A stretch of 64,000 nt of DNA from Podarcis erhardii (Eukaryota): NCBI GenBank assembly GCA_964252035.1, contig OZ176201.1, one strand, 5' to 3'. The notes below the pieces were generated by a model that had not been told where the DNA came from, made no database searches, and saw nothing but the letters and a program-made list of their open reading frames with translations. This document shows, piece after piece, positions 13,629 through 54,554 of the stretch; within the stretch, counting starts at the first letter, position 1; the number at the start of each line of letters is the position of its first letter. The translations under genes were made by a program, and so were the position numbers.

Positions 13629-14475
13629 CTTTTGCTTCGTTGTCAGAATTGTCAGTGCTGGTGTCTGTGCATTTATTCATGTCCTTCTCAGTTTCCGACG
13701 AACTGATTTTGGCAGCGGGGAGACTTTTTTCTGTTTTAATTTCGTTGGCGGACGTGTTCTGAGGGTTATCAGACTTTGCGTTGTCAGGGAAGCTGACTTT
13801 AGCTCCTGGTTGGGACAGTGGTGGCGGTGGCGGCTGCTGCTGCTGCTGTGGTTGCTGAGGTGGTGGTGGTGGAGGTGGTGGTGGTGGAGGAGGTGGTTGT
13901 GGTGGTTGTTCAAGATGCTCACTCCTTTGGCTGAGGCTCGCCCTGGGTTCAAAACTTGCCTCAAACTCGCTTGGGTTGCTGCAGTTTGACGCCTTTTCCA
14001 TGGAGGAATAACCTTGGCTGGCTCGGTAGTAGCTGGGCACGGGGACTTCATGGTCATTTAGGCAAGGTTCAGGCATCTGATTGGGGTAGAGGGTCGCCTC
14101 AGTGGCGTTTTTTGCTCTTTTGTCAGCATTGTACATACAGCAAGCATTTTCTTCCTTGACATTGGTTGGGAAAGAGCAGGAGGGGAGTTGTCTCGCAACA
14201 GGTTGTTCGATTCGGTAAGTATTTTTGGGGTCACACCAGGTGTCTAGCTGAGAAAGGTAAGATGGATAGGTGTTGAGAGACAGGCTGGCGTTATTCACCT
14301 CGTCTCTTTTGGAAAGAGACGGGATAATTCCACAGTTCCTCATCATTCCACAGTTGAAGTCGTTCCCAGATTGCATATACATTCCTTGGTTAGAGGAATA
14401 ATTCTCCCCTCTGCAGGTACCGGCTAACGAGTCCATCAAAAACGAGTTAGAAGTCACATTGTTGGGACATGACAT
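13629..14475 (-). CDS. HOXC10: Homeobox protein Hox-C10, exon 1
   Basis: MSCPNNVTSNSFLMDS...MYMQSGNDFNCG...EVPVPSYYRAS...SDNEAK matches HOXC10. Donor AAAG|GTAAGG at 13628. 847 nt + 278 nt = 1125 nt = 374 aa + stop; intron 10270-13628. Confidence 0.97.
13819..13908 (-). repeat. Coding trinucleotide tract giving a 30-aa poly-Pro/Gln stretch in HOXC10
   Basis: CCA/CCT/CAG/CAA-rich run translating QPPQPPPPPPPPPPPPPQQPQQQQQPPPPP between EHLE and LSQPGAKVSF. Confidence 0.93.
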
Positions 14476-26465: not shown

Positions 26466-26698
26466 TCACAACAAGGGATTTCCAGAGAAATACTGCAGGC
26501 GGTCTCTGCTTAGTTTTTTTTCTTTCATCCTTCTGTTCTGAAACCAAATTTTAACTTGTCGATCAGTGAGATTCAACATTCTGGACAGCTGCAGCCTTTT
26601 TTCTTTGTTTATGTAGACATTGAAGAAAAATTCTCTCTCTAGCTCTCTGATTTGGAATTTCGAATAGGGACATCGCTTCTTTCTTGTGCGGGGGGCAC
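26466..26698 (-). CDS. HOXC11: Homeobox protein Hox-C11, exon 2 (homeodomain)
   Basis: Polypyrimidine tract then TAAAG|GT GCC CCC CGC. Encodes [76 protein letters not shown]. Confidence 0.97.
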
Positions 26699-27492
26699 CT
26701 TTAGGGGGGAGGGAGGGAGAAAAATATAACCAGGAGGGAGTGAAAATAACTAAGCAAATGACACAACAGAGCCCCAATAACCCCCCCCCCATCACCAAGA
26801 GCTCAAATGCATAGCTTCTCTCTCACATGCACACCCATCTGGAAGCACATCCTACGGCCATGTGTAACATCCTAACAGACATGTGTACCACAACACAGCC
26901 ATGAAGACAGCCTTTCCTGTTTCCAGCCCATGATCATTTTCCCCTGTTTTGGGGGGCTTTTCCAAAGGGATTCCTGAGTGCAATAATCAACAATAACTGC
27001 TGGGGGGAAGGAAGCCGGCGAAGCAGCTGGGAAGCATACACGTTCAAACTGCAAATCTGCCGCCTTTCTTACAGAGTTAGCAGGAGCAACGTTAGAACTA
27101 TGAGGGCTCAGAATTCTGCTCTGCATAAGTTTTTGATTATCGGGAACGCCACCCTCCAAATACATTCAGCACACACATACACACAGAGAGAGAATCAAAG
27201 CAACATATCTGAGCAGTCAAAAAAAAAAAGGGAAGCAATGTGTTTCCCAAGGCAGCAAACAGAATTGCAAATACAACGTGTGCGCGCGCCTGTGTGTGTG
27301 TGTGGGTGTGTAAGTTCACGCAGGACTTAGCGTTCCATTCACCTATGAATGAAAAAATAAATAAACATCCATGATGCATTTACTTGAACAGTTGCTTCGA
27401 TTTAAGGTTGTTGTTGTTGCTTTAAAAATGAAAATAAACCCACTTATATATGAATATCTAAAGGCATCTGAGTATATTAAAATATACTTAAA

Positions 27493-27528: not shown

Positions 27529-28141
27529 TAAACACATTTAATAGCAAAATAAGCATTGTCTATTTGAAAAGAAATCACCCAAAGAACTACGCCTAAGCAA
27601 TGCAATTTGCAGGAAGAAAAGCAACAACAAGAGCAAGAACAACAACACAGGATGCACTGAGGACATGAAAACGTTGCATTCCCTTTCCCCACATTCATAG
27701 CAATATTTGAATTTCTGCATGCATTTTCAATAAGGGGAAAAAATAACACCACCACCCCCCCTCGCTCGCTCGCGTGCATCTCTCAGTGCCTCCTCGCGAG
27801 GACAGGAAGCAAGAGCAGTGTTCTGCCCAATTGCCTTTTACCCTCAGAAGCCCGGGACCAAATCCTTTTAAAATGCTCATGTAAGTTCATGATCAAAGTT
27901 AATATTTGTCACCATGGTGTGCTTTTAAAATTTCACAGACTCTGAGATACTGTGTCTGCGCCTAACATCTCCATTTTTCTCAAAGAGCCTTTCCCATCGT
28001 AAAAATTCTTCTCGTTGCAAGAAAGAGCTTTGTAGGTTATAATAAAATCCTTTGAATGCTTATAAAACTCCACATAAAATTTGACCGACAAAACAGCGGG
28101 CTAGTCCCTTAACCTTTCCATTTACTGCTTTCTCTACCTAC

Positions 28142-28820
28142 TCGAGTTGCTGGTTTTGCTCCCTTCCTTGTTGACAGAGGAGGATGAAGCTGAAGAGCCC
28201 GGGTTGGTGTTTTCTTCCTCGTCTTCCGGGTCTACGCCTTGGTCGCCGCGGGATGACAGCGCGGTGGGCTGGGAGTCGGTCTCCAGCTTGCTCTCGGTCT
28301 TCTGCAAACAGGTCTCGGGCGGGTTCTCGGTGGAGCAGTAGGCGTTTTCGAAGAACCGGTCGAAGCCTTGCGGGAGGACACTGTTTTTGTTCATGCTGGA
28401 GTAGAAGCCCGTGGACGCCGGGTGGTTGGAGCTGGGGTGATGGTGGTGGCTGTATACGCTTTCGTTTTTCATTAGCATTTCGGTCATGGTGGAAGGCGGG
28501 AGGCAATCCCTGTGCATCAGATCTTCCGCGGAATAACACGAGGCGTAATTGCTTCTATGGTGCCATTTATTCGAGGGGTCTAGCCCGTAGGAGACCTCTC
28601 GCACTGGCTGCACTTGAGAGAGGTTAGTGGAATAAGGGTAGGAGATTTGGCGAGAGGGGGCCTGTGGCAAGAAAGATGACACAGTTGAAAATTCTGGGAC
28701 GTAATAGGTGCAGCTGGGGAGGTAGAGATTGGAAGCGCAACCTGCTCGCTCTCCAAAGTCAGCACTCCGCTCTTTGCGCGACTGGGAGCAGAAGTTTCCT
28801 AGGTTCACTGAGTTAAACAT
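28142..28820 (-). CDS. HOXC11: Homeobox protein Hox-C11, exon 1
   Basis: [64 protein letters not shown] matches HOXC11. Donor TCGA|GTAGGT at 28141 gives phase 1. 679 + 233 = 912 nt = 303 aa + stop. Confidence 0.96.
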
Positions 28821-29190: not shown

Positions 29191-32100
29191 TTGGATTTTG
29201 CTTTCAGTTGTTCAGGAGGATTCAGATATGGGGTTGGGTGGGGGTAGCTCAGGGGTGGAGGAGGCGAGGGAGGGTCTAAAGGATGTGTTAACTGTAATTT
29301 TTCCTCTCTTACTTTTTTTTTAAAGGGGGTTCTTTCCATGCAAGTCACATTTTAGGCATGATCATACATATTCTTTTATTTCCCTTTTTCTTCTTCTCTT
29401 CTCTGTCTTTTTTTCTTTTCTTTTCTTAAAAATGTGGATTCAACTGTTAGAAGCCCAGGGGACTGGATAAAGATTCTTCAGTAAGTTTTCAAACATTTCT
29501 CAAGGTCTTGCTCCAGGAGTCCGGAGCACATCTCCATATAGTGGGTGTGGGTGGGATCTTTGGAACAGATAGGTATATAGGGGAGCAACTGGCAAGTTTC
29601 TCACGTTTATTAATTACTTAGATGCCTATGTAGGGATCTCATGTATGCATAAGGACACCTAATCTGCCAAAGAGAATGCACACCTCCAGCAGAATATCCC
29701 AAATATGCGAGGAGCCGAATAAACTTTGAAACTTTTCTAGGGATTTAAGCCCGAACCTGAACCCTCTGAGGCATGGGCTTAATGACTTCAGAGTATTGGA
29801 ATTAGGGAGGATACATCAGGACATAGGACTAATAAATATTCGAAAGCCCCCTTTAACGTTTGGTTAAATATTTATTATGTAAGAGTGGTATATTGAATAT
29901 TTAATGCAGCTGTTTATTGTCAATCAATGTATGTTCACGGTGCCTTGCGACCTTTATTCTGCCAGCGAAAGAAAAGGCAGGGGGGTGCACTGAAAAATAA
30001 ATAAATAGGATTCTTATTAAAGTCATTTGTCCTTGTATTTGGTGCTCTTGGAGTCTCTCAGCGCCCACCCTGTGATTCCCTCAGATTTTTAAAGCTGGAA
30101 GAAGGAATATTTGTAAAAGGTGTCTTGTAGAACATTCCTCGTGACTTTCAGACAATTGTTAACCTAAAGTGTCTTCTTTCAGAAAGCCATGCTATAAAGG
30201 CGTTTAGAGAATATTGACAGTTGATAGAGGCTGCTGGCATATCCAGTAAAGTCCCCCTAAACAAAGGATGCGTGCTTAAAACTCTCCTGTCTTTCAGATG
30301 ATCTGGAGCACACATCACACAGGCTCATCAAACAGATTTTGCGCCTGAATTGACAACTTTTTCATTTGTTTTTATTTTATTTTTTTAAAAGGTCTTGTAA
30401 TTGATCTGCAAAGAAATAAATAAAAATGTTTAGTTTCCACCTGATGCAAAATATCTCCAATATTTTGTTGTCTTTTTGCTCTCATCTCTGCCTTTATCTC
30501 TGTTTTTAATTCACTTTGCTCTCTTCAAAGAAGTGTGTGTGTGCGTGTGCGTGTGTGTAGGACCCAACAACTTTGCTTTGTTTACATAGAATCCTCCCGC
30601 CTTAATCTCCATCGCTGGCTCCAGTTTTGGACAGTTTAAAAGCCTCATAACAAAATTCACACAGCATCAGGAGGGCAAAATGACTTTACTAGTGATATCC
30701 TGTCAATTCGTGTTGCAGTAAATTAAACTCTCAGGAACAAATAACAAAGTCCAGGAACATGGCGGGCTGGTATATAAGAATATGTGGGAACTGAGGGGTT
30801 GTTGTTTTTTAACGTTATGGTTTTTGTGGTTGTGAAGCTTTTCCTTTGGGTAAGCCTTGAACAAATCCTTAAGAAGAAGAAAAATCTAGCAACTTGTGAT
30901 ACAAAAGGAGACGCTCTGCGATGACCTCATTTGCCCCATAATTCATTTTAATTTGGGATGCTCTTTTTACTTTTAAAACCACCAGGTAGAGTTTAGTCAG
31001 CAGGTAGAACAGATACCTAAGCAGTCTGCAGCGACGAAGACGCCCCAGGAAAGGAAGGGACATCTGCTGAAACAAAAAAGGGAGGATGAGATTAATGAAC
31101 AGAATGACTGAAACGAAAAATGATTTTTGGTCACGGGGAGGAAACTGACTATATCGGACAGGAGATCAAAATCTTTAAAGGTCGTGTGTGACTCGGGACT
31201 GAAGCATAGCCTTAAAAACCACAGTGGGACTTTTATTGGGTGGGTTTCTTTCAAATCCAGAGTCTTTATTAAGTGATCCTACAGACAAAACCTAAAGAAA
31301 ACATGGCGGCTCTTGCTCTCTCTTTCTCGTGAAGCCCTCTGATCAACCTGTCCTTTTAATTTCATACGCCTACGGGCGACGTTCTTCACTTTCGACTGTT
31401 CTGCGTCTTTGGACGTAGGATGCCTCGCCCGCAGAGGGTTCAGATAAACGCGCCTCCAGGTTCCAAACCATTCTGAGCCTCCTCACCAAATACACACCTC
31501 TGCGCATGGGGAAGAAGAGATGGGTGTGTGTTGTGTGTGAGAGAGGGGGGACAGGAGTAGTGCAAGGCTTCTGCAGGGATGGTTTGTTTTGGCTCTCTCC
31601 TTCGCTCTGCCGTTTATGAGTTGGATGATGCTTTAGACACAAACTTTTAATTAAAGTGTCAGGGAGCCTTTAACGACCCCTTTTTACGCAGCAATATTCA
31701 TGCTAACTACAAACTAATAAAAATATTGTTTACGGGGATCATTATTTTCCTCCACTCCTTCTTACCAAAGACTATTTATTGAACCTGCCCGAGGTGGGGT
31801 GGGGAAACTGAAGAAATTTGCAGTGCTGGGTGCTGTTTCGGAATGGTTCTGCAACATCTCTTGCAAAGTTGCCCCCGCCCATTCCCCCCACCTCTTCTTC
31901 TTTATTCCTTCTTTCCACTTTTCCTGGTGGGGCAGAAATTTCTCCTCTGTCTCATCCGGCTGCATTGGTGGCGAGCAGAAAGGGTCTAAAGCGGGTGGCT
32001 GTTGAAAGCATGTGGGGTATAACACACAGGATATCTCCTCTAGGTGTGCGAATAATTTATTGCTCTTAATAGGTAGATATAAGCTCAAGCGAGCCCCAGT

Positions 32101-33647
32101 GCCGTTGTGTTTTTTAAAGCCCGGTTTAAAGTATAGGATTTGTCGGCTTCCTGCGAAGAAGCACAGAAAAGACAGCTGTGGAGCCACAGCACTTGAATTT
32201 GAACCACCAAAGTCAATTCCCTGACTACCATAAAACAGAAGAATGAAGGCTGGAAGTCTCACATTCCTTTTGGTCTCCACTTAGAAAAAAATATATAAAA
32301 CAACACAAAAAACCCAACAGCACATTGAGCATAAACCGTGAGTGCTTTACTCGTTGATAGATTTCATATTCACAGCCAAGAAATACTTTTAAAAAACTTT
32401 TTTTAAAAAAATAGTTGTCTAAAAACCCTCTTTAATATATATGGGGGAGAGAGAAGAAGTAAGAAAAGGAAAAACCTTTCAAAGTAGGTGCGTTGTGACA
32501 GTGTGTCCCCAAGTTGTGTGATGGTGTGACTCACTATGAAGATGCACAAGAAAGAGCAGAGCAGGCAGAGAGAACAGGATTGTGTCAATTGCCAGGCAGA
32601 GCTTCCTAGGTGTAATTAGACATATGTATATGTTCACCCGGCTGGTTATTTGTGGCTCGCCAAGTGTACTTCAACATGGCATTGCTGTGTTAATCTGTTG
32701 CCGGGTCATTTGCCCGACAGAACCAAGATCACACTATAAACACATCCCAGTATTTTGTTATTGTTATTATTATTTAGGCAGAAAATTGTATCCACGTGGA
32801 CAAGACTTTCTAGGAAACGTACTTTTCTGTGGGTAAAATGAACTTTGAAAGAACCCAGCTCCGATTATAGTTGTGGCGGGTTTGGCCAAAGAAATGTTCC
32901 CATCGTGGTCAGGACTCCGGTCTCTGGGTTTGTTTGTGTACATTAAGCGAATCAAGACTGAACGGTACATGATGGACAAGGCGGATTTGGGCATAACTAA
33001 CAAACATTTGCCAACTAGTCTATGGACGGCAAAGATTTGTAAGTGTGGTCGAAACCCGCCTTGGATTTCATATGAACTAGTTTCATCGTCTTCTTATCAG
33101 TTTGGGAGATAAATTAACATATGTAAATCAGTGCAAATTTCGATTAACTTCATGGTCCACACCGATTAATGCTTTCATTCAGAGATCGCCATACTGGTCT
33201 CTCTTTTAGAAATGTGCAGACTATGACACAAAGACTACCTTCTAGAATATGCATAAATGTAGATATTCTAATCTAAATCTCTCTTTTCCCATCTCCCAGA
33301 ATCCCAATCATAGGCACATGTACTACCCAACCCTAAAGCTTTTCCTAGGGAGAAATGGGGTCACGAAAATGTTGTTTACCTCTTGCCTTTTGGCCTTTTC
33401 TTGCCGGATTTCCCCCGAATTTCAGAATGAAGCGGACGCCCCTTAGATATTTCTACGGCCTACAGTAAGATAGGTTCTCTATACAGGGGATGAAGGATTA
33501 CTTTTGTGAGGTTTGGGGATGGGAAGCCACCCAAACCTTTCAAGCAGCCGTTTTCGCATGCCTTCTTTGGGCCAAAGAATCCCAAACTTTTGACGCTTTA
33601 GGATTGTGACCTGTGAGTCTTCAGCGATGCAGCTCACTGGAAGCAAT

Positions 33648-33706: not shown

Positions 33707-34278
33707 TAGGAATGATTTTTTTCCCCGTGCTACAGCAATGCAATTACTTCCCAAGGAAAAATAAAATACCCCGATGTATTTAAATCAAGCCAAAGGGTAC
33801 TACAAACCTTCGCCAGCAAGCAGATTATCCTCGACTGCTTGTGTGTTCAGGAAATCCGGGGCCAGAGACAATAGCTACAAGTAGGAAGCTCTTGGAAAAT
33901 ATTATTGTCCCCCAATGGCAAAGATAAATTTAATTGGATATAAGCCAGCCTACTAAAGACGACTTCATAAGCTGCTAACGATTCAAAGCGGGGAAGCGGG
34001 GAGGGGGAGAATGTTTCAGATCTTCCACAGGCCAGGGCTGCAAGTTCAAAATCATGTGGACCCAATAAAGATAAAAGCTGATAAGCGGTATGCTTCCCAG
34101 CCACACGCAAAGTCAACAGTGAGCAGTATAGCTGCGCTGAGGGATGCCCGGACTAGATGCCCCACGCAGAATTCTCCTCTGCGCATTATTGCGGTAATAT
34201 AAACCATCATAATTGGGAGGATTGCAAATGATACTTGGCATATTGCAATGAATAATAAAGTGCAGTGATTGCTCAGTA

Positions 34279-34379: not shown

Positions 34380-37300
34380 ATATCAATATACATGTAAGGA
34401 TCGTTAGGTCAGTTCCACTAGTTAGGAAGCTAGAAGCGAATAAAAGGAACTCTTACGCCAACATATTTGGCCGACCCTTCCAGTCCAGACACACTTGAAT
34501 ATATATGCTACAAAGCCAAGTTCACTGGAGTTTGCCAATGGCTTATTCCGCTTTCCAAATGAAAGGGGACCTAGTAATTCACCCAAGAAGCCAATTTTCG
34601 GTGTGTTTCAGGTTCCTTTCAAAAAGAATAGCTGCACTGGATTGTGTTCAAAAGAAAGTGGGCCATTGACCAACATAATACACAAACGTTTTAAAAGCAC
34701 CCAACGTTTTAAATAATAAAATTCTACAACACGCAGAGAGTGAATAGACTTGCATAGATTTTTTAAAAATGCTTTATTGTCTGGATGAGGTTCTCGGGAT
34801 GTGGATCATCAAATCCCATCTAAGGAATTCTTGTTTCACGTGAGAGTTCAGTTTTATTAGCAAATATCTCCGTATGCACGATACAAACTGTATTGTAACG
34901 GGATAGCTTCTTATTAGATTGTGTGAAGGAAGACATAGCAGCCACTGCGAGTGAGATTTTGCCAAAAGGGGTTTAGCTTATATGAAACATTCTGCATTTG
35001 GTTGTGTGTATGAGCTGGATTTTTTTAGCTTTTTAGTCTACCTTGATACCTACATTTCTTTCATTTCAGCCAGCAGGCTGCCTTGTTCCCATCAGACACA
35101 CCGTGATCAAAGTGAAATCTCAACGTTTTTACAGGGGAGGGGCGGAAAGAAACTTCAATAGCTTACCCTCCCGCTCCCCGATGTAAGTCAGTAGGGCTGG
35201 AATCAACCCCAGTATCCACATTTATCAGAATAAAATGAAACAGAATGCCTGGGATAGTTGTGTGGTGACATTCGGCAAACATAGAAACCAGCTATAAGGA
35301 ATGCTCATTACTTCAGAGCGCCTTTTGGCAATGCTATGAAATATCAGCCTCTTTGTTTGCATGGGGACGTGTGCGCGTGCGCAAGGCAGTCTCTCTCTCT
35401 CTCTCTCTCGCTCTCTCGTGAAATCTATGTGTCCCTCAATATATGCATATGAGAACAGTTGAAAGTAACTTGATAGCCCACAAGTGCATCTACAGACATC
35501 AATTGTTGGAAATTCGCATGAAATGCAACTACAAACGCATGACTCTATATGTGCTTTTTGTTTTGTTTTGTTTTGAAATCTCGTGAATTATTATGTCTCA
35601 TGGTTTCTAGAAATTAGCGGTAGATGAGTTACTTTCAGTGGGGTACAAGATCTAAATGATCCAGTCAAGATCCAGATCCTGTCCTTTAACAATAAAGTTG
35701 GGGGGGGGGGGAGTGTGCAGCAATGCATTTAACTTTCAAACGTTTGCATTCCCTTGGAAATCCTTCTTTAAATCTCAAATTATATTTATAAAATGAGGTA
35801 CTTAGTTTAAAAAAATTACTTGGAACAAAACCCAAATGCTGTATTTCTCTGTATGCCATTCCACTCATGAAGTCGAATAGTTATTGTGGTCACGATCCGG
35901 CCACAGTTAAATCCCACCAATGTCACTGAGGGACATACTTTATATACACACACTACCCTGAAATTAATTTAAAAGTGACAGTCTTTGGCTGGATCGTGCC
36001 TTTGACTATTTACTTGTGTTACAGCTGTCCCTCTCCCCATTTATAAACCCTCTTTTTATTAAATACCAGACGCTTTCTTTCTTTCTTTCTTTCTTTCTCT
36101 CTCTCTCTCTCTCTCTCGTCTCTCGCCCGCCCTCTCTCTTTATAGATATATACACACAGAGTGACTTACTAAACTGAAATTTAAAATATCTGTTTTCTTA
36201 GTAACTTTATATTGCTTTAGTTATTGACTTCATCCTACTAGGATTCAGAACCAGCTTGTCTGAAGTGCTGTTTGATGCTTCTATTCTCTCCCTCACGCGC
36301 ACATTCCATCATTCTGCTTTCTTTATCAGACATACTCCCTTTGGGACTTCTTCAAATCTGCTATTCTGTGTCTACATATAAATGGATATTTTTTTACAGT
36401 AAGGAGTTTAGGAACTCACATGGTCGCATTGTCCATTTCAGTAAGCGAGAGGGGTGGCTGTAGCGAGAGCAAATCCAAAATTGTGCGTCCTCTGCACGCT
36501 GGAAAAGGATGCAGATTTGTTTGGCTTTGTTCTTAAAATACCTTTAAATGCTAGCAGCGAGATACTAAATATTTTAAGCTCGGAGTTCCCGTTGACTTCA
36601 AGGATGTGCACATAAGGATGTCTCCTCATAGTGACTCGTATCGTAGGTAACGTGGCAAGTAGGCTGCTGTTTACAACAAAAATAAAGCAACGCTAATTGA
36701 TAATGTGGGACTGAAAGGAAAGGACAAGTATATTCCGTGTTGATTTTTTTATTTTTTTAATAGAAACAGAGGCCGTCTTTTTTGAGGTGGAGTCCTGTTT
36801 ACCAATTTCCTCTGCCATGCAGGGCAAACGAATGGGAAAAAAAGCTCTCCCGTGCCTTCTGCGCCACGCAGAAATCCTAAAACAAACAAATAAACAGGAC
36901 TGGAAGTTCAAAACGGGGAAGAACTGCATGCAGATAGCGCTGCAAATGCACATCTGGCATTAGTCTGGGAAGAGCCACACAAGCGCGCGCGCACGCTGTA
37001 TAGATTAGGCGGCTTTGAAAACTGTCACTGGGAAATCTGTTCATTTTCTCTAATGGACTAGGAGAAGGATTGTTGTTATATTCCTCGCCCATCCCACAAC
37101 AATATCCTTGCTAAACAGCACGCACGAACGCCGGGTGTCAAGACAATATAAATGATTGGGTTTGTGTTTTTTTGTTCATATGCGTTGCGGCGCTGCCGCC
37201 TCAGCTAAGTAACAACTGTATCCGCTACCGCTATGGAGGAGGGCCATAGACCCAGGCGAAATTTATAGCGGCCCCGGCGTTGCGGTTATGATTTTGCTAT

Positions 37301-38300
37301 GATATTACTTGGGAACAAAGTCCCATTGATTCCCTTGGAAATCTACTCTCTTGCAAAGGCGTGGGGTTTTTTTGTTTGGTTTGTTGCTTTCCCTCCCTTA
37401 CTCCCACCGTCCCCACCGCACTCCTACGTCGCTGCCAATACGAGAAGAAAATGGGAAGCGGGGGGGGGGGGGGAGTGGAGCTACTTGGATAGCCTAAAAT
37501 TATGGGTTGACCTCGATCGAGATTTAATTCTCATGCTCCCCTCCTCCATCTTGCGGTGGTAAGGAAGCGAACCTGCTCTTCTCCTCCGTCTCAGCCAAAA
37601 CAAGGACTCCAGCCATTTTTCATATGTTTCCTTCGAGAGGAAGACTTATCTTTCACCATAATGAGAACGGCTTTGCCACTGAGAGGGAGGGGCGCTTTTT
37701 TGGGGTGGGTGGGTGGGAAATAAATAAATAAATAAATAAAGCCTCTTTATTCACCCACTAACCACCCACTTTCGCCTCTCTCTCTCTCTAAATTTCCTCC
37801 CTTTCCCTTCCCTTCCCCTCTCCTCCATCACCCTCCAGCCCTTATCCCAGTCGTGATATCACCTTATCGGTTCAATCTATGTAAAGACCACCCACCCACT
37901 CCCCTCTTTAACCTCCGAATCCCTGGCAGATCTCCTGTGCGCAATTAGGCCCGTTCTGGGACCTCCGACGGACAACCTGTGATATGAGAAGGTCTATAAT
38001 CCAGCCCTCCACAGTAGACAGGCTACTCAAGACTTTGCAGGATCTCCCCTCATTTCCGCTCTTATTAATTTCAGGCGCCCTGATCTATCCAGCCCATCCC
38101 TCCCACCTCCTCCTTTATTTAAAGATTATACGATTAAGACAAGAAAATCTAAACCCTCCTTTCCCTTATCCCCTCCCCCCACCCATTCTCCCCCTCTCCT
38201 TACCGAGCGAACTTCATTGTTTTCTGGAGGAAACCGTAATGTTGAGACATTAAACCCTAATTGGGCTTTTCTTTATGACGTTTAATTTCCTCCATCGCAG

Positions 38301-38660
38301 ACGTGTTTGCATCTTGCTGAAAGAGGAGTTGTTTGAAGTCTGCAATCCCGGAGGGGGGGGGAGAGGGAGGGGAAAAAAAAACTTTCCAAGCAGCAGTCGT
38401 CATGCGGACTTCTGGTCTCATTCCCACATAGTCTCACCCTCCATGCACCCCCACAGCCTTCCTCTTGATCGTTGCATTCAGATAGGCCCCCCTCCCTCAA
38501 AATAAGAATGGTGATGTAAAAGAGAGGGGGAAATGGGCCGGGGGGGTGTTTAAAAAGAGAGACAGAGACCCATATGTTTACTCGGGTAAGAAATGCGATG
38601 GCCATTTAGCTCTGTTGTGACAAATCCATGAAAATGGAGGACCGCCGTATACCATATAAG
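38301..38660 (+). ncRNA. HOTAIR: Candidate HOTAIR-homologous lncRNA exon block (antisense to HoxC)
   Basis: Motifs ATGTTTAC, AGAAATGCGATGGCC, TGAAAATGGAGGACCGCCG and CCATATAAG|GTAGGA align colinearly with my recollection of human HOTAIR exon 4. TTTGAAGTCTGCA...GAGAGGGAG resembles exon 3. There is an acceptor TTTAATTTCCTCCATCGCAG at 38281-38300, and the position between HOXC11 and HOXC12 is syntenic. Transcription is not shown by the sequence. Confidence 0.55.
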
Positions 38661-41176
38661 GTAGGATGCTAACTTGACCTTCACTTTGTAATGGCGGCCC
38701 CCGCCCACCCAGACAGACTGTTGTAAACAGAAGTCATCCGACAAAAAAAAAAAAAAAAGATTAGCACCGGGCAGACAAGGTCTCGCAGAATTGCTAACAC
38801 ATTTGCTGGTTTTTAAGCGGCGGCAAACGAGGTACAATATTCTCTGAACTACAGTAGGGGACGGAGTGGGGGTGGGGGATGGAGGAGGAGGAGGGAGAAG
38901 AAGAAGAAGGGGGGCGGGCCTCATCATTGGAGATCAACAAAGGTCTCCCCAGATCTTTAGTTTGCTGTATTAAAGGGTTGTTAAGAGGGGGTCTTCCAAC
39001 GCCGGGCTTCGTTTAGATTACAGCGTCCGGAGCTGTTGTTGAATGTGGCCTTGAGGTAGAGGGTGGCTGGGTGACTGGGTGGGGGTGGCCGGCGCTTCTC
39101 TTAATGAATTTATCTGTCCAGATTCCTTAAAAAACAGCAATTCTTCATTACGATGACGACGAGGACGGACGATTTACGAATTCACTTTAATTTTAATGCA
39201 GGAGATCATTCAAAAAAATCGCCTCTGCTTTTATTTAAATCTATAGAATGTTTTGTTTACGTCAATCTGAAATGGAAAGTGTTAAAAGAAAGCGCGAGTA
39301 GCCTTCCTTCTTTCCTTTTTAAGGAAGGCAACGAGAGTCTCCTGACTCGCCATTTCCGCAGCAGCCAAATCACAACAGTGGCAAAAAGTTTGTCAGAGTG
39401 CAGAAAATAGGTTTAGTTTTCCTTTTCGAAATGCTGTGTTTGGGCCCAGGAAAACGCTCGGTCCGTGATTGTCAGTGCGGGGAGTTCAGCCTTGTATGGT
39501 GGTGGCGGCTGTTTGCTGGGGGGGGGGGGAGGGAGGAGGAATCGAGACTGTACCTGATCAAACAATATAATTTATTTAACATACCTTTTTGCTTGTTAGT
39601 TACCTAGACATAATGGAGCGCTATCGATAGACGGGTCATGGATCCCGATCCACTGCACGTATTAGACGATCGTCTCCATTTAAGTCATTTTATCCCCCTT
39701 TAAACCAACCTAGTAATAATGGCCACCAAGTTATTGCATCTTCCACAAACTCAGAACTTTTAAAATCAGCGCCGCATACTTCACTGATGCAACGCCGCCA
39801 GTAGTTTATATAGATGAGTAACTAGGAAAGGCACGACCAAAGACCAATTAATTTCAATGAGGAAGAATTAAGCACGTGCTTAATCGACAACAAGGGGACT
39901 TACAAGCGCTCCACTTTGACTGGATCCTGCCCTTTCAGGAATACAGAGGAGGCAGTAAACTCTAGGTATTGTTAGGCTGATATTGTATCACTACATTCTG
40001 ACGCAGATAACTGGCATAGCAAGCAGAGCATGTTTGCTTGTTTGTATGTTTATTTGTGTGGAGAAACACAACATTCTAATCAGACTCATCATAAGCATGA
40101 AAAAGGGTGAACATGTTCAAGTCTCTGTCGGCAAACACAACCACCTATTGCCCGGTCTTGGCGGGCTAATCGTCGCCTTCATTTCAAAGCTGCCCTCTCC
40201 CTTTGATTTTAGCAGCAGCTACTGGGAGGTGTGTTTTGTGGGTGTTTAAAGCCCTTCGTTTGGTGGCCCTACGTGTACCTCTGAGACGGAGTACATGCGT
40301 TCTCCTTTGTCATTTACATCCAGAGCTCTGGATTTGTTCCTTTGAATATTTGTTCCTTAATTCCTATGGCTGCTTTGTATGGCCCCTCACTGACCCAAAA
40401 TTTGCACTACCACGCAAACGCATGCAGAATATGTGCAAATATTTTGCCCCCACTCAGTCAGGAATCCTCGAGGGACACAAAGGATGCCGGCAGCAGGACT
40501 TTGCTGATTGTGCAACCTTTAAAGGACAATTCGGTGGAACTCCCTCTTCAACTGCAGTAAATGGCAGAGCTCTCGCAGATTTTGATGGTGAGTCTTGGAA
40601 GGCGCTAGCTGTTCGCTATTAGGACTCCCTCCTACCCCACCCTATTTCATATAATAATACTAATGATTCTTTCTTTCTCAAAACCTCACACAGCCTCATA
40701 ATAGATTAATAGTTCTTCATCACAATGAGATGAATTTTCACATGCCCTTTAATTATCATCTCATCTCCAGCGAACACTGGTTTTGGAGAAGGTAAAGGGG
40801 AGGTATTGGATACAACTACAAAGATGGTCCCCCCCCCCCTTGGGAAGATTAATGTTGGCTGTGATTCTTAAAAGATCTTCAGATATAGCCCAGGCTGCTT
40901 GCATAACAACTATCAACTACCACAAGGCCTTCATCACATCACTTTATTAAAGGGGGAAAGTATTTTTAGCCTGTCTGTTTCAGACCCAGCCAACCATAAA
41001 GAAAGATTCTTAAATGCAAATGCGGTCTTATTTGGGTTCCAGAAAGGCAAATGAGATTTCTAACTTTTGGGCATGCCTTAAAAGGAGAGTTTTTAAAGCC
41101 ACCTTCACTCTTAATTATGGGAAAGCCCTAGCGTTTCCAAATATAGGAAAACGACTCAGTCCAAGTTAAGCGTCAA

Positions 41177-41212: not shown

Positions 41213-42170
41213 AAAATTTATCGCTTTCAAGTGGGAGAGATTTAAACACCTGCTTTGAGGCTGCAGTCATAGGCAGACACATTTACTTGGGAATAAGTAA
41301 ATAGGGATAGTATGAGGGAGCACATCTCTCTGAACTCTATAGAACTCCATAGCCCTTAACTCAAGCTAGAATGTGTGCACATTTCCTTTCAAATTAAGGT
41401 TATTGGGAGATACACGTAGACATAACCTCATGTTGTTGTTAGTTTGTTGGTTGGTAAGTGAGTGGTTTTCTTTAATTGATTCATCAACTCTGCTGGTTAA
41501 CATAATCTCACAGAAACAAAGCCTGGCTGTAAGAAATTCTAAGCAAACTCTTATGGCTCCTGCAAGGAATACAAATGTATCCATCTTTGTATCTTTCCTA
41601 TCCTTTTCATCTTTATTATCACTCTTGTTAACAACACCAGCGAGGCTTGATACATATATCTCGTTTAAATGCAGTCAACCATGAAGCCACTGCAGTTGGT
41701 TGCTACAGACATATTAATTAATTTATTCTCTCAACAGTAAAATATTGCTGTGTCTCCTTGCTACCAACCAAGTCATATAAAAATCAGGGTTTATTTTTTT
41801 ACCCCCTCTGCAGTTCATTAGGCTTTACCTATAAGTTTCCATTTGAAATGATTTGCTTTAAAACTAATTACTCGTATTCTATTTCATTTCCCAATCCCGG
41901 AGTGTAAGATGGATTCAAAGGTGGCGTGGGTGGCATATGTTGGTAAACATTGCTAATTATTCCCACTCTGTCTTGATTGTGTATTTATGAACCCACCCAT
42001 ATAAAAGGGGGAGAAAATACTCAGTAAAAGGTGCGCTGGCATATTGATGATAATGGCACATGTTACTTAAAAGAGTGCAGTGTCGCTAGGGACAGTGTAA
42101 GATGATAATGTATCAGCCGAGATTTTGTTTAGCAGATTTCCACTTTGAGAATAAAATATTGGACTCACTC

Positions 42171-47126: not shown

Positions 47127-47175
47127 ATACATACATACATACATACATACATACATACATACATACATACATACA
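47127..47175. repeat. (ATAC)12 tetranucleotide microsatellite
   Basis: Perfect tandem run. Confidence 0.95.
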
Positions 47176-50100
47176 CCCCCATCCCCTACCACTCATACAA
47201 CCTACACAATTCATGAAATTTAAATTGACTCTGTGGAATCGCTGCTATAAAGGCACCTGGCTGGATATTCAGAAGAGAGAATAAAACACGAAGCCAACGG
47301 GAGGAATTAAATATGGGCTTATTGAAGAAGATCGAATCCAAGGCTCGTGAGGGTTTTTGTGCTTTGTTTTGGAGGTGGGGTATTTGTTTTGTTTTTGTTT
47401 CTATTACAAGAGTTGCAGATTTAAATAAAAGTGTCTCTTAATTAAAAAAAAAAATCCATGTTATTTTAAATAAATAAATATCTTCCCCCTTTAATCTAGG
47501 GGAACTTTGTCTTGGCCTCAGTTGCTCCTGAAAGGGGACAAAAAGAAATAGACTGGTGACACTTCTCTTTCCCAGTGAACAAAATATCAGTAATGATTCC
47601 GTTTATAAGCAAGGCCATCAGAAGACCCCCCCCCCAAAAAAAACACACACCCTTATATTCGCATTAAACGTTAACATCCCAGATTCATTTACTCTCTTAT
47701 CTTCTTGGATTTTTTTTTTTAATTATAGGTATCATTGTGCTCCGAGGCACCCCTTACTTTACAACCTATTTTATATATCCACTTAATTATTTTTTTAAGG
47801 GAAACATGATCTATATACCTCCAAATGTTTCATTGGCTTATTTCTGTGTGCGCGCTACTCTTTTACTAAGCTTTCTCGGTCCTCCAACAGTCGATGGTAA
47901 ATCACCAACCAGAGGTTTGAAACATTTTATTTATTATCAGAAATCACATAATAATACATTCAATTTATTATTATTATCATTATCATTATTATTATCATCA
48001 TCATCATTATTATTGTGAAACAACTTTTTACATGACTATATAAAGCCGGGGGAACGTGCTATGGACAGACATTTGCATAGGCCCTACATATAATAGCTTG
48101 AGGTAAGAAACATTACATATGGACTATATTGCCAACGATGCATATTTAACAACAGCAGGAAACTAGACTAGAGAATAACAAGCGAAGGACCGAGCCACAG
48201 ACACCGGGAACTAACACAAGACGAACAGAATTCACACGGAATAATAATACTTCAATGCAATCTGAACGAGAATATTGCATATATTTAACTTCTTCATTTT
48301 CAAATTTTAAATTATTATTCCCCCTCCCTTTAAAAAAATCGTTGAAGTGGCAACTGAGAATCGCCTGTTATGTGCAGTTACACACCAAGGAGACCATTCT
48401 CAGGACTCAAGATTCTTGCTGGTGGGTTGTGTATTGTATTTCTAAGCGTAAAACTCCTTCGCTGTAGATAGAAATCGCTCTCGGCGCGTAAAATATTAAC
48501 ATCAAGACAGTCTCTTTCTCTCTGTCTGTCGCTTGCCACAATTGTAACCGAACGCTGCGTTATAACATTGCCCCCTAAACGCTCAAAACCCTGGTAAGCC
48601 AGAAGCCAACCCCTTCCAAAATGCAACCTTTTGCCAGCGAGTGACATGTCACATCTTTTCAAGAGGAAGCGATGGTAGCAAACCAAGTACAATACTGATA
48701 AGTCTGATTCCTCGAACATGTTCCTCCTTTACCGCACAGACACAAGTCTTCCCTTCTAGATTTATGCAACACACCCCATGACATTTCAGTTGGCTGAAAG
48801 TCGTTATTTTGACCGAAAATGCTGCTTCTTTCTTATGAATATTATTGAGAAAACTGGGACAAAATGGATGATGACAGCGCTACCGGCTTAAGCGGTTTCA
48901 TCGGACTGCTCTGTTCAAAGGAGGCAAAGCACAGGCTGGAGACAAGGGGAATGGCGTTAGACTGAAGCCTACAGTTTTCAGTTCTTCAAGGTACCTTTTT
49001 GGAGAAATAGGTAGGCGTCCTCCACATTTAGCCGCCTAACAACACAGACACCCACATGTGCTCTGTTCATTGCACATAACTGGGGGGGAAATATATGGAT
49101 GTCTCTCACACACGCCCCCCTCCCAATCTATTGCACATAATTGTGACTGGGTACCTATTAGATTCAAAGCAACTCACAGGCAGAGAGGATGCCTCATCTT
49201 TTACAAAGGTTAGAGTTTGTAAAGCGGAGGGGTGATATACCAAAAGGGTGATACTGGGATGGGGGACCTCTCAAAACTCTGGATATTGGGGGGGGGGCAG
49301 GGGGAAAGCGGACTAAAGACAAGGAACGATGGCACAGCCATGGGAAGCAGACCTAAATATAAGGCTTGCAAGGGTGGAGAATGAGCGGGGCGGGGGACAC
49401 ACAGAGGCATTTTAAGGACTAGACGGCATCCTTTGCAGCTCGTAAAGGCAAAGCATTCCTGCCACCGGCCATGACCATGAACGCCGGGACGGGGAGCCAC
49501 GTGGTGACAATTGAGTGTGGCCCAGGAAAACGTTGCCTTTGTCATAAAATTAATCCCCTCCGATATAAAAACGAATGAAGCAAAGCCTGTCGTAGCAAAA
49601 CTCGCCGCTTAGACCGTCTTGACCCCCCTCACCCTACTTTGCTGTTGTGGCTCATTTGTCTCTTCGTCCAGTTCCCGGCCGCTCCCCCCCCCCGCCCCGC
49701 GGCATTTTTTTTTTTTTTTAAGTATGCAATTAGGAAACCAGCAGAACAGAACGAGAATAGGTTCCTGGACCCCGATGGAATAAGTACCAGGAATATCAAG
49801 GGAACTTATTCCCAAGTCAATCATTTAACGGGCTGACAGGGAGAGAGATTCCTGTCGGGTTACTTCTACGGTTGCAGCAACCCTTGTCTGCCGCCTCCCC
49901 GCGCGCCTTCCTCCCCGCATTGAGTGGGAATTTAAGGAATGGGAGTTTAAGCAATGCCCAAGCCTGGCAGAGCTATTAGGAAATCTAATGGTTGTCTGAG
50001 GCAGGAGCTGACCGGCAAGGCAACCGGCTCTGCGCTTTCCCTTGCCTGCTCTGGGACTGTTCTACACCGGGGAAAGTACAAAGGGGAACCGGCGGTGGGG

Positions 50101-52061: not shown

Positions 52062-52300
52062 TTAAAAGAAGGAAAGGGCTTGCTCTCTCAGGAGGAGTCT
52101 TTTCTTTTTCATACGCCGGTTCTGGAACCAGATCTTCACCTGCTGGTCACTCAGGTTTAACCGATCTGAAAGCTCCCTCCTTCTTTGGCGAGTAATGAAT
52201 TCATTGACCATAAACTCCCCTTCCAGCTCCGCTAGCTGTAGTTTAGAATAGGGTTTTCGCTTTTTCCGGGACCTTGTGTGCATCGGGTACCAGGGAGCAC
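52062..52300 (-). CDS. HOXC12: Homeobox protein Hox-C12, exon 2 (homeodomain)
   Basis: Acceptor TTCTTAG|GT GCT CCC TGG. Encodes [79 protein letters not shown]. Confidence 0.97.
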
Positions 52301-52666
52301 CTAAGAACAGCGTGATGGAAAGGAGATTTAAACACATGGAGGGGAAGAGAGATAGAGAAAGAAAGAAACGAAAAGAAAAAGGGGAGCGGGTAACGCTTTA
52401 AAAAAGGGAATGCTTCCCCCCTCCCTTTTTGACCCACACACGGCTCGTTATTTAATAATATGAGATACACGTTTCTAATGCGCAATCCAGTAAAGATGCT
52501 TTAACTTCGAGAGAAAGGAGGATGGGTGGGAAGAAGAGCTTTACATCTTCGTTTTAGATTCCAAGCTCCTGGGCTTCTGTGTCACCACGCATACCACATA
52601 AGTCATACATTGCAGGTTTTCGGAACTATTAGGATTTAAGGAGAGACCTTAAAAAAACTAGTTAGG

Positions 52667-53567: not shown

Positions 53568-53919
53568 GCATGGAAATCTGTCTATCTGGGCCATCGCGAT
53601 CTCTTTTATGGGATATTTACATGTTTATAGGCTTTTCTTTTAAAAGAAGCAGCACCTAATAAAGCACGAGGCATTTGAGTGCTACCCCTAGTGGCCTCGG
53701 CACAAATAGACATGCTTCAGTCCCAGCTGCTAATTTCATGGAATTTATAACAGCAAGAGTCGCGAGCAGACTTTTTCAAGCGAAAGAGCGCGCGCGCGTA
53801 AGAGAGAGAAATAGAGAGAGAGAACACAAAATAGGAATAAAATAAAGAAGAGGCATTGCATAAATTCGCTTTTCTTATTCGTATATATATATACATATTT
53901 CCTGGTCGCACGTTCTTAC

Positions 53920-54484
53920 CCCCAGCGGAAAGATTGCTTCCTTGGTTGATAGGGGAAACCATTGTGGACGGCTCGCTGGTGGCGCCCTTATTGCCTTCAT
54001 TGAGTAAGGAGGAGCTGGAGTCTGACTCCAAAGACTGACAAGAGGGGGGATCGTGGGGCACCGCCTCGGGAGCCGGATAGTCAAATTTGCCGAAACTGCC
54101 GCTCATTCCATTGGGGATCCCCGATTCGAGAGGCATCAAGGCATTGTCCCTAACCCTCTCTTCCCTTTTGAGGGGAGCGTTCTCGGAGCACGCCTCCCTA
54201 TAGTAGCACTTGCTCTCTTCCACTCTAGCTAGGTCGCAGGCTCGGCTGAAGGAAGGGTTAATAGACACGGGGCTGCTGAGATAGGGCTGGGGGTATCCGT
54301 TGCAGGGTTCTGAGGATGCCCAGGGCAGAGAACAGACATTGTCCCTTCTTGGGTAGGAGAGAGACGGCAAGCCGGGCAGCTGTCCTCCGGAGGCTCGGAA
54401 ATTGGGGAAATAGAAGGTGTCTCCCGTATGGATGTTCACCAACGGTCCCACAAACCCAGGATTAAGGAGATTATGTTCGCCCAT
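53920..54484 (-). CDS. HOXC12: Homeobox protein Hox-C12, exon 1
   Basis: [33 protein letters not shown]...[24 protein letters not shown] matches HOXC12. ATG at 54484 and donor GGG G|GTAAGA at 53919. 565 + 239 = 804 nt = 267 aa + stop. Confidence 0.96.
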
Positions 54485-54554
54485 TTCCGCGGGCCTGACC
54501 AAGAGCTTCTAGTTTATTGCTATCTGACATTAAACATAGTTAAACCTAAAGGTC

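What the first reader, a model, noticed from the sequence alone, without database searches (positions are those of the whole stretch)
38281..38666. HOTAIR exon 3/4-like block with intact splice signals in a reptile HoxC cluster
Seen: on + (antisense to Hox) 38574-38666 reads ATGTTTAC-tcgggta-AGAAATGCGATGGCC-...-TGAAAATGGAGGACCGCCG-tata-CCATATAAG|GTAGGA. Recalled human HOTAIR exon 4 end: ATGTTTAC-aagacc-AGAAATGCCACGGCC-...-TGAAATGGAGGACCGGCG-cctt-CCTTATAAG|exon end. Four motifs match in order and the match ends exactly at a GT donor. About 200 bp upstream, TCGCAG...TTTGAAGTCTGCA...GGGGAGAGGGAG (38295-38369) matches recalled exon 3 (TCGCAG...TTTAGAAGCCTGCAG...GGAGAGAGGGAG) at the expected spacing. 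A polypyrimidine tract + CAG acceptor (38281-38300) and a CTAAT branch candidate (38257-38261) would define a 360-nt exon. The block lies about 42% of the way from C11 to C12, close to the relative position I recall in human. HOTAIR has generally been described as mammal-restricted in sequence, so this would point to an amniote-ancestral spliced lncRNA or conserved cis-element. The human sequence is from memory.
Basis: partly seen in the sequence, partly recalled or inferred. Interest (0 to 1): 0.88.

Follow-up and report, generated by a model that had tools for sequence, protein, structure and literature searches.

The report
Gecko copy of HOTAIR's conserved core
This gecko carries a true counterpart of the most conserved part of the mammalian HOTAIR locus, next to an already published ancient conserved element, and it looks more like a regulatory DNA module than a proven spliced RNA exon.

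Summary
The window is a gekkotan HoxC cluster on the minus strand, and 38558-38660 (+) is orthologous to mammalian HOTAIR exon 4. Rfam HOTAIR_3 hits it at E=2e-4 to 8e-4. A profile built from sauropsids only, without the donor or the CNE, finds the expected site in camel (E=1.8e-5) and bat (E=2.8e-3).

That is the same offset the paper reports for human. That paper already lists alligator, turtle, frog, coelacanth, gar and shark, and notes longer conserved flanks. So the finding extends known work to squamates.

The exon-3 part is weak: one shared 10-mer. Conservation does not stop at the proposed exon borders. The best-conserved stretch (38198-38295) lies upstream of the proposed acceptor.

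The "donor" is also a perfect CArG box (38652-38661), and a human SRF ChIP peak covers that spot. Three bird assemblies lack the exon-4-like sequence and the GT but keep the flanking elements. HOTAIR_2 and HOTAIR_1 (exon 6) matches follow colinearly at 41597-41744.

No transcript evidence could be obtained. Best reading: an enhancer-type module, possibly transcribed. Interest is modest.

The parts
38198..38295 (.). Upstream conserved module, the best-conserved part apart from the CNE and the short stretch just before it. It carries homeodomain-type motifs (TAATTG 38258-38263, TTTATGAC 38272-38279, TTTAATT 38281-38287) and a Sox-like CATTGTT (38215-38221).
   Evidence: 85-93% identical to Gekko, four turtles and three birds, 69% to bat. 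The sauropsid profile hits the bat at the colinear place with E=3.6e-12, birds at E~1e-35 and tinamou at E~3e-33. The motif readings are my inference from consensus knowledge.
38281..38300 (+). The AG at 38299-38300 is kept in all nine sauropsid sequences, but it sits inside conserved sequence that continues about 20 nt beyond it.
   Evidence: Alignment A1. The bat does not align here. No evidence of use.
38331..38344 (+). GTTTGAAGTCTGCA motif, the only well-supported piece of the exon-3-like match.
   Evidence: Conserved in geckos, turtles and birds. The bat has TTTAGAAGTCTGCAG between its upstream module and exon 4. The profile test is not significant on its own.
38558..38660 (+). Exon-4-like segment, the orthologue of Rfam HOTAIR conserved region 3. 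The 3' 29 nt (38632-38660) are 90-97% identical in reptiles and 83% in bat. The 5' part keeps TGTTTAC and AGAAATGCnATnGCC.
   Evidence: Absent from three bird loci (no hit at E<=1).
38652..38661 (.). Perfect CArG box CCATATAAGG (CC[A/T]6GG) spanning the exon end and the first intron base.
   Evidence: One of only 6 CArG boxes in 64 kb. CArG + 8 nt + CNE is kept exactly in Gekko, 3 of 4 turtles, bat and camel. A human SRF ChIP peak at chr12:54359673-54359803 covers the orthologous spot.
38661..38668 (+). GT donor and 8-nt spacer GTAGGATG. The donor AAG|GTAGGA matches 7 of 9 positions of MAG|GTRAGT.
   Evidence: 100% identical in geckos, turtles and bat; camel has GTACGATG; replaced in birds. 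[quoted passage not shown]
38669..38700 (.). The published 32-nt HOTAIR CNE ('HOTAIR ancient sequence').
   Evidence: 30/32 identical to the human sequence printed in Table S1 of PMC7139118. Unique in the window, with 0 expected by chance. 81-100% identical in all ten aligned sequences.
38697..38745 (.). Downstream flank. The GC box GCCCCCGCCCACCC (38697-38710) is kept in all species. CAGACAGAC..TGTAAACAGAAGTCATCCGACA is kept in geckos and turtles only.
   Evidence: A human SP1 peak overlaps the orthologous region.
41597..41662 (+). HOTAIR conserved region 2-like block (a mammalian exon-6 domain).
   Evidence: RF01905 at 47.5 bits, E=1.4e-8. 76-80% identical to camel and bat at the colinear place.
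41707..41744 (+). HOTAIR conserved region 1-like block, 45 nt after the previous one (49 nt in bat).
   Evidence: RF01904 at 22.9 bits, E=2.1 alone, but colinear and 73-83% identical to camel and bat.
28134..28820 (-). HoxC11 exon 1 (context; anchors the interval).
   Evidence: 94% identical to Gekko japonicus Hox-C11.
52062..52337 (-). HoxC12 homeobox exon (context; far end of the interval).
   Evidence: The ORF translation contains a homeodomain.

Best explanation
Window 38198-38745 is the gecko orthologue of the central HOTAIR region of mammals. In order it holds an upstream homeobox-site-rich module, the exon-4 sequence, its 5' splice-site sequence, the published 32-nt HOTAIR CNE and a GC box. 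The orthology is shown here. The mechanism is my inference: the block acts mainly at the DNA level, as an enhancer-type regulatory module of the posterior HoxC genes. Likely binding factors are SRF at the CArG box on the exon/intron junction, SP1/KLF/EGR-type factors at the GC box, YY1-type factors at ATGGCGG, and homeodomain or Sox proteins in the upstream module. Like the human and mouse element, it is probably transcribed on the anti-Hox strand when active. Whether that RNA is spliced at 38660/38661 is unproven. The exon-4-plus-junction unit is a separable sub-module. It is kept in squamates, turtles and mammals and lost in the birds sampled.
For: Orthology: Rfam and profile E-values; CNE unique in the window; CNE sequence. 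Order, orientation and spacing are the same as in bat. DNA-level reading: conservation is continuous over about 650 nt in geckos and turtles (70% over 691 nt, E=2.5e-90). It peaks outside the proposed exon (upstream module 85-93%, CNE 91-100%), while the proposed exon interior is 36-68%. It is one of about eight conserved non-coding blocks upstream of HoxC11. The junction is a perfect CArG box kept in 6 of 7 non-avian comparison loci. Human ChIP peaks for SRF, SP1, TCF12, EGR1, CTBP2 and EZH2 cover the orthologous 730 bp, and the paper's text adds YY1. The paper also reports bidirectional CAGE, DHS, H3K4me1 and H3K27ac in myoblasts and in mouse hindlimb. There is no strand-specific RNA structure signal.
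Against: No chromatin, reporter or expression data exist for any reptile, so the enhancer role is carried over from mammals. The 8 nt after the junction, which lie outside the CArG box, are also invariant, and a used splice donor would explain that. Birds lost the exon-4-like sequence and the GT together while keeping both flanks. That fits an exon unit as well as a lost binding-site cluster. One turtle breaks the CArG (CCATATACGG) but keeps the GT.
Confidence: 0.55

Rival explanations
1. Mouse-like HOTAIR orthologue. The upstream module and the GAAGTCTGCA region form the promoter-proximal region of an anti-Hox lncRNA. Its first exon ends at the conserved donor 38660/38661, and its last exon contains the HOTAIR_2/HOTAIR_1 block (41597-41744). 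The sequence constraint would then be partly on the RNA and its splice site.
For: Mouse Hotair has two exons. The second half of exon 1 matches human exon 4 and exon 2 matches human exon 6, while human exons 1-3 have no mouse match. Tammar keeps exons 4-6. Those are the pieces conserved in the gecko. The donor context and the next 8 nt are invariant in geckos, turtles and bat. The exon-4-like sequence and the GT are lost together in birds. A mammal-type exon-4 acceptor is poor in this gecko (GGGGGTGTTTAAAAAG) and absent in Gekko, which fits a first exon.
Against: No transcript evidence. An ORF lookup meant to recover transcript contigs found nothing. The exon-6 acceptor cannot be aligned. There is no RNA structure or covariation signal. 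The junction conservation has the CArG alternative.
Confidence: 0.25
2. One reading: an internal 360-nt exon (38301-38660) of a spliced reptile HOTAIR, fusing the exon-3-like and exon-4-like parts. It would use the CAG acceptor at 38300 and the CTAAT branch point at 38257-38261.
For: The pyrimidine tract (14 of the 17 bases before the CAG) and the AG are present, and the AG is kept in all nine sauropsid sequences. The donor is a reasonable match to consensus.
Against: The proposed branch point and most of the pyrimidine tract lie inside the most conserved module, which is also conserved in the bat, where the acceptor itself does not align. Conservation runs across the acceptor. The exon interior (38381-38557) is about 42% identical in turtles and carries large indels. 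The exon-3 homology is weak. It would need an upstream exon and promoter, for which there is no evidence.
Confidence: 0.1
3. Chance resemblance, or a false match from recalled sequence.
For: The Rfam score (33.1 bits) is far below the family's gathering score of 80.
Against: E-values of 2e-4 to 8e-4 across all 4227 families. Independent profile hits at the exact colinear place in two mammals. The adjacent published CNE is 30/32 identical at the same 8-nt offset. HOTAIR_2 and HOTAIR_1 follow colinearly.
Confidence: 0.01

Closest known systems
HOTAIR CNE / 'HOTAIR ancient sequence' with its conserved flanks (Nepal et al. 2020, iScience, PMC7139118)
   Same: The 32-nt core is present (30/32), between HoxC11 and HoxC12, 8 nt from the exon-4 donor, with longer conserved flanks. 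The authors already list alligator, painted turtle, frog, coelacanth, gar and elephant shark HoxC copies, and they read the element as a poised or active enhancer producing eRNA.
   Different: No squamate was in their 37 species. The text I could read does not describe conservation of the exon-4 sequence, its donor, the CArG box or the upstream module in reptiles, nor the loss of the exon-4 part in birds. They attributed the birds' missing HoxC CNE to unassembled clusters, whereas the three bird loci here do carry the CNE core.
Mammalian HOTAIR exon 4 (Rfam RF01906, HOTAIR conserved region 3)
   Same: Same position, orientation and motif order, ending at the same donor. It is the exon shared by human, mouse (as part of exon 1) and tammar.
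   Different: Scores 33 bits against a gathering score of 80. The middle of the segment has diverged and carries indels. Exon status in reptiles is untested.
Mouse Hotair two-exon architecture (Schorderet and Duboule 2011, PMC3102750)
   Same: The gecko conserves the exon-4-like and exon-6-like (HOTAIR_2, HOTAIR_1) pieces that make up mouse Hotair, and lacks clear counterparts of human exons 1-3.
   Different: Transcription, start site and splicing are unknown in the gecko.
Other Hox antisense lncRNA loci with conserved domains outside mammals (HOTAIRM1, HOXA11-AS, HOTTIP; Gardner et al. 2015, PMC4378963)
   Same: Several Rfam 'conserved regions' recovered in order at the syntenic place in sauropsids.
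   Different: Those are in HoxA and reached reporting thresholds in birds, alligator and turtle. That survey's text, as read here, does not report HOTAIR itself.

Membership tests
Rfam RF01906 HOTAIR_3 (HOTAIR conserved region 3) | Score at or above the curated gathering threshold (80 bits) | tested here: not met
   33.1 bits, E=2e-4 to 8e-4. The bat itself reaches only 68.1 bits because of a 20-nt deletion.
Rfam RF01906 HOTAIR_3 (HOTAIR conserved region 3) | Syntenic place between HoxC11 and HoxC12, same strand relative to the Hox genes, colinear with HOTAIR_2 and HOTAIR_1 | tested here: met
   Window order is HoxC11, HOTAIR_3, HOTAIR_2, HOTAIR_1, HoxC12. All hits are on the Hox-sense strand, as in bat. 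The gap between HOTAIR_2 and HOTAIR_1 is 45 nt against 49 nt in bat.
HOTAIR CNE (Nepal et al. 2020) | 32-nt core with few mismatches, between HoxC11 and HoxC12 | tested here: met
   38669-38700, 30/32 identical to the printed human sequence, unique in the window.
HOTAIR CNE (Nepal et al. 2020) | Lies 8 nt from the exon-4 splice site | tested here: met
   GT at 38661-38662 and CNE starting at 38669. The paper gives the same offset for human. This holds at the sequence level only.
HOTAIR CNE (Nepal et al. 2020) | Enhancer chromatin (DHS, H3K4me1, H3K27ac) and bidirectional transcription | not testable with these tools
   Reported for human and mouse only. No reptile data were reachable.
HOTAIR lncRNA gene (spliced, polyadenylated anti-Hox transcript) | Transcription from the anti-Hox strand and use of the exon-4 donor | not testable with these tools
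   No RNA data.
HOTAIR lncRNA gene (spliced, polyadenylated anti-Hox transcript) | Counterparts of human exons 1-3 and 5 | tested here: inconclusive
   No HOTAIR_4 or HOTAIR_5 hit in the window or in the bat. The exon-3-like match is limited to one 10-mer.
HOTAIR lncRNA gene (spliced, polyadenylated anti-Hox transcript) | Conserved RNA secondary structure with covariation | tested here: not met
   RNAalifold z=-1.1 on the HOTAIR-sense strand and -2.2 on the opposite strand for 38558-38660. Single-sequence z=-1.8. Only six sequences, so power is low.
SRF-bound CArG element | CC[A/T]6GG sequence conserved at the orthologous place | tested here: met
   38652-38661. Kept in Gekko, 3 of 4 turtles, bat and camel. 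SRF binding is known only from one human ChIP peak.

The most novel reading that the evidence does not exclude
HOTAIR is not a mammalian invention. Under this reading, squamates and turtles express a spliced anti-Hox lncRNA with a mouse-like two-exon core: a first exon ending at the 38660 donor and a last exon carrying the HOTAIR_2/HOTAIR_1 block. It would be inherited from the amniote ancestor and lost secondarily in birds. The sampled birds deleted the exon-4-plus-donor unit but kept the flanking enhancer pieces.
Probability: 0.3. Interest if true: 0.6.

Novelty: new member of a known kind. Interest (0 to 1): 0.35.

Why it matters
HOTAIR is still widely described as conserved only in mammals (for example PMC3103462 and PMC5577775). 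This locus shows that the pieces shared by all mammalian HOTAIRs are also kept, in order, in a squamate and in turtles: exon 4 with its donor, the adjacent CNE, and the exon-6 domain. So the sequence core is at least as old as amniotes. It also gives a concrete, testable contrast between DNA-level and RNA-level function. The same ten bases form both a CArG box and a splice junction, and birds provide a natural deletion of that unit alone. The central discovery, an ancient HOTAIR element with conserved flanks, is already published, so this refines that work rather than adding a surprise.

Tried and rejected
1. Rfam at gathering thresholds found only mir-196. HOTAIR hits appear only with E-value thresholds.
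2. HOTAIR_4 and HOTAIR_5 were not found in the window or in the bat, even on a 3.9-kb slice. Exon 3 therefore could not be anchored with a curated model.
3. Transcript evidence: an exact lookup of the 107-aa minus-strand ORF across the block found no contig.
4. Loci that could not be used: opossum and frog returned no DNA, and the Paroedura protein was not on record. The tinamou contig ends before the CNE. So palaeognath birds, snakes and ray-finned fish are undetermined.
5. RNA structure: there is no strand-specific signal. A hairpin pairing AAAATGGAGG with the CNE's CCTTCACTTT across the donor has invariant arms, so covariation cannot be tested.
6. Coding potential was rejected: only short or chance ORFs are present, and indels break the frames between species.
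7. Chance similarity was rejected (see the rival explanations).
8. The earlier-findings index held nothing relevant.
9. I did not use human sequence from memory. The human anchors are the 32-nt CNE and the coordinates printed in PMC7139118, plus Rfam consensus lines.
Full report
CONTEXT. The window is a HoxC cluster on the minus strand. It holds mir-196 at 7463-7536, HoxC10 exon 1 at 13570-14475, HoxC11 at 26466-26798 and 28134-28820, and HoxC12 at 52062-52337 and 53717-54502. HoxC11 exon 1 is 94% identical to Gekko japonicus and 90% to Paroedura picta, so the genome is a gekkotan lizard. The window contains no N. The finding lies 41% of the way from HoxC11 to HoxC12, on the anti-Hox strand.

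OBSERVATION. To avoid relying on recalled human sequence, I used Rfam's curated HOTAIR models. HOTAIR_3 (RF01906) covers 38557-38659 at 33.1 bits. Its E-value is 8e-4 for the whole 23-kb interval against all 4227 families and 2e-4 for 6 kb. That is well below the gathering score of 80.

HOTAIR_2 (41597-41662, 47.5 bits, E=1.4e-8) and HOTAIR_1 (41707-41744, 22.9 bits) follow colinearly. All three hits are on the Hox-sense strand. In a bat locus the same three models also hit the HoxC11-sense strand, two of them above gathering score. Hotair is transcribed from the opposite strand. So the Rfam models are written as the reverse complement of the RNA, and the gecko arrangement matches the mammalian one in order, orientation and spacing.

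INDEPENDENT HOMOLOGY TEST. I fetched the 10 kb upstream of HoxC11 from Gekko japonicus, four turtle assemblies, three bird assemblies carrying the columbid HoxC11 protein, a tinamou, Myotis davidii, Camelus ferus, a snake and a bowfin. I built profiles from sauropsid sequences only and searched them against the two mammals.
- The exon-4-like segment without the donor or CNE (38558-38660) finds the expected site in camel (E=1.8e-5) and bat (E=2.8e-3).
- The upstream module 38191-38300 finds the bat site at E=3.6e-12.
- The CNE with its flank finds both mammals at E~1e-13 to 1e-15.
- The exon-3-like segment (38301-38380) has no significant hit at the expected place. Its best hits are purine-rich sequence elsewhere.
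Only the 10-mer GAAGTCTGCA is shared with the bat in the anchored interval.

Nepal et al. 2020 (PMC7139118) described a 32-nt "HOTAIR ancient sequence". Their Table S1 prints it. Window 38669-38700 matches it at 30 of 32 positions and is unique in the window. It begins 8 nt after the GT at 38661. [quoted passage not shown] The paper lists HoxC copies in alligator, painted turtle, frog, coelacanth, gar and elephant shark, and says the flanks are conserved over a relatively long stretch. It interprets the element as a poised or active enhancer with bidirectional CAGE tags, DHS, H3K4me1 and H3K27ac, and with intron-retained reads. No squamate was included.

COMPARATIVE ANATOMY. With strict scoring, 38191-38844 aligns to a turtle at 70% over 691 nt (E=2.5e-90), and it is one of about eight conserved blocks upstream of HoxC11. 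Identities to the window by sub-block:
- Upstream module 38198-38295: 85-93% in sauropsids, 69% in bat.
- 38301-38380: 36-46% in turtles.
- 38381-38557: about 42% in turtles.
- 38558-38631: 66-68% in turtles, 51% in Gekko, 36% in bat.
- 38632-38660: 90-97% in reptiles, 83% in bat.
- The 8 nt GTAGGATG: 100% in every non-avian sequence of that alignment. The camel, aligned separately in the same call, has GTACGATG.
- CNE: 81-100% in all.
So conservation peaks outside the proposed 360-nt exon and runs across both of its borders. The three bird loci keep the upstream module (E~1e-35) and the CNE (E~1e-17). They have no exon-4-like sequence (no hit at E<=1) and no GT.

SPLICE SIGNALS. The donor AAG|GTAGGA matches 7 of 9 consensus positions. 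A mammal-type exon-4 acceptor is good in turtles, poor in this gecko and absent in Gekko.

A DNA-LEVEL ALTERNATIVE FOR THE JUNCTION. CCATATAAG|G (38652-38661) is a perfect CArG box. It is one of six in 64 kb. It is kept together with the 8-nt spacer and the CNE in Gekko, three of four turtles, bat and camel. In human H1 cells, an SRF ChIP peak at chr12:54359673-54359803 covers the CNE (54359708-54359739) and the exon-4 end. SP1, TCF12, EGR1, CTBP2, CHD1, EZH2 and SUZ12 peaks cover the same 730 bp, and the paper's text adds YY1. The invariant GC box (38697-38710), ATGGCGG in the CNE, and the homeodomain and Sox-type motifs in the upstream module fit this picture. These motif readings are my inference.

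RNA-LEVEL TESTS. RNAalifold on six species gives z=-1.1 on the HOTAIR-sense strand and -2.2 on the other strand for the exon-4-like segment. A hairpin across the donor has invariant arms. The single-sequence fold gives z=-1.8. There is no coding potential. No transcript contig was found.

ARCHITECTURE. Mouse Hotair has two exons, corresponding to human exon 4 (as the second half of mouse exon 1) and exon 6. Tammar keeps exons 4-6. The gecko conserves the same two pieces.

VERDICT. Orthology to the HOTAIR exon-4/CNE region is secure, and the sequence is at least amniote-ancestral. The finding extends a published element to squamates and adds detail: the donor that doubles as a CArG box, the upstream module, the exon-6 blocks and the loss in birds. 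Function is inferred. Interest is 0.35.

Noticed in passing
window 38557-38659, 41597-41662, 41707-41744; L009 348-2848: Rfam HOTAIR_1, _2 and _3 models hit the Hox-sense strand in a mammal as well as here. They are therefore written as the reverse complement of the HOTAIR RNA, and strand calls from these families should be inverted.
   Followed up: yes
window 29829-29934, 30579-30760, 31641-31750, 32010-32290, 33801-34112, 35217-35272, 36919-37061: A chain of conserved non-coding blocks between HoxC11 and the HOTAIR-like block, shared with turtles and mostly with birds. 29843-29930 and 32170-32235 are also shared with bat, camel and bowfin.
   Followed up: partly
L006-L008 about 1540-1950 (birds), against window 38381-38668: Three neognath bird assemblies replaced the exon-4-like sequence, the CArG box and the GT with unalignable GC-rich sequence of similar length. 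They keep the upstream module and the CNE core. Nepal et al. had attributed the birds' missing HoxC CNE to unassembled clusters.
   Followed up: partly
window 38631-38640 and 38678-38687: AAAATGGAGG in the exon-4-like end can pair with CCTTCACTTT in the CNE (9 of 10 pairs), placing the donor in a loop. Alifold gives z=-2.9, but both arms are invariant and the opposite strand scores z=-2.2, so there is no covariation evidence.
   Followed up: partly
window 38198-38745 (HoxC) against the HoxD11-12 paralogue (not in the window): The reported D11.12 Polycomb-responsive fragment is said to contain an alternative HOXD11 start site. Nepal's HoxD CNE lies about 55 nt downstream of the ncHOXD11 start site. 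The HoxC block may therefore be the paralogue of that fragment. Untested.
   Followed up: no
L001 about 150-240 against window 38558-38631: Gekko japonicus has diverged more from this gecko in the 5' part of the exon-4-like segment (51%) than turtles have (66-68%), and it has lost the AGAAATGC motif. Constraint on that part appears relaxed within geckos.
   Followed up: no
window 7463-7536 (-): mir-196 precursor at 87.2 bits, the only Rfam hit above its gathering score in the window.
   Followed up: no
window 47128-47176: A TG/TA microsatellite that scores weakly as mir-297 (30.4 bits against a gathering score of 90). This is a low-complexity artefact.
   Followed up: no
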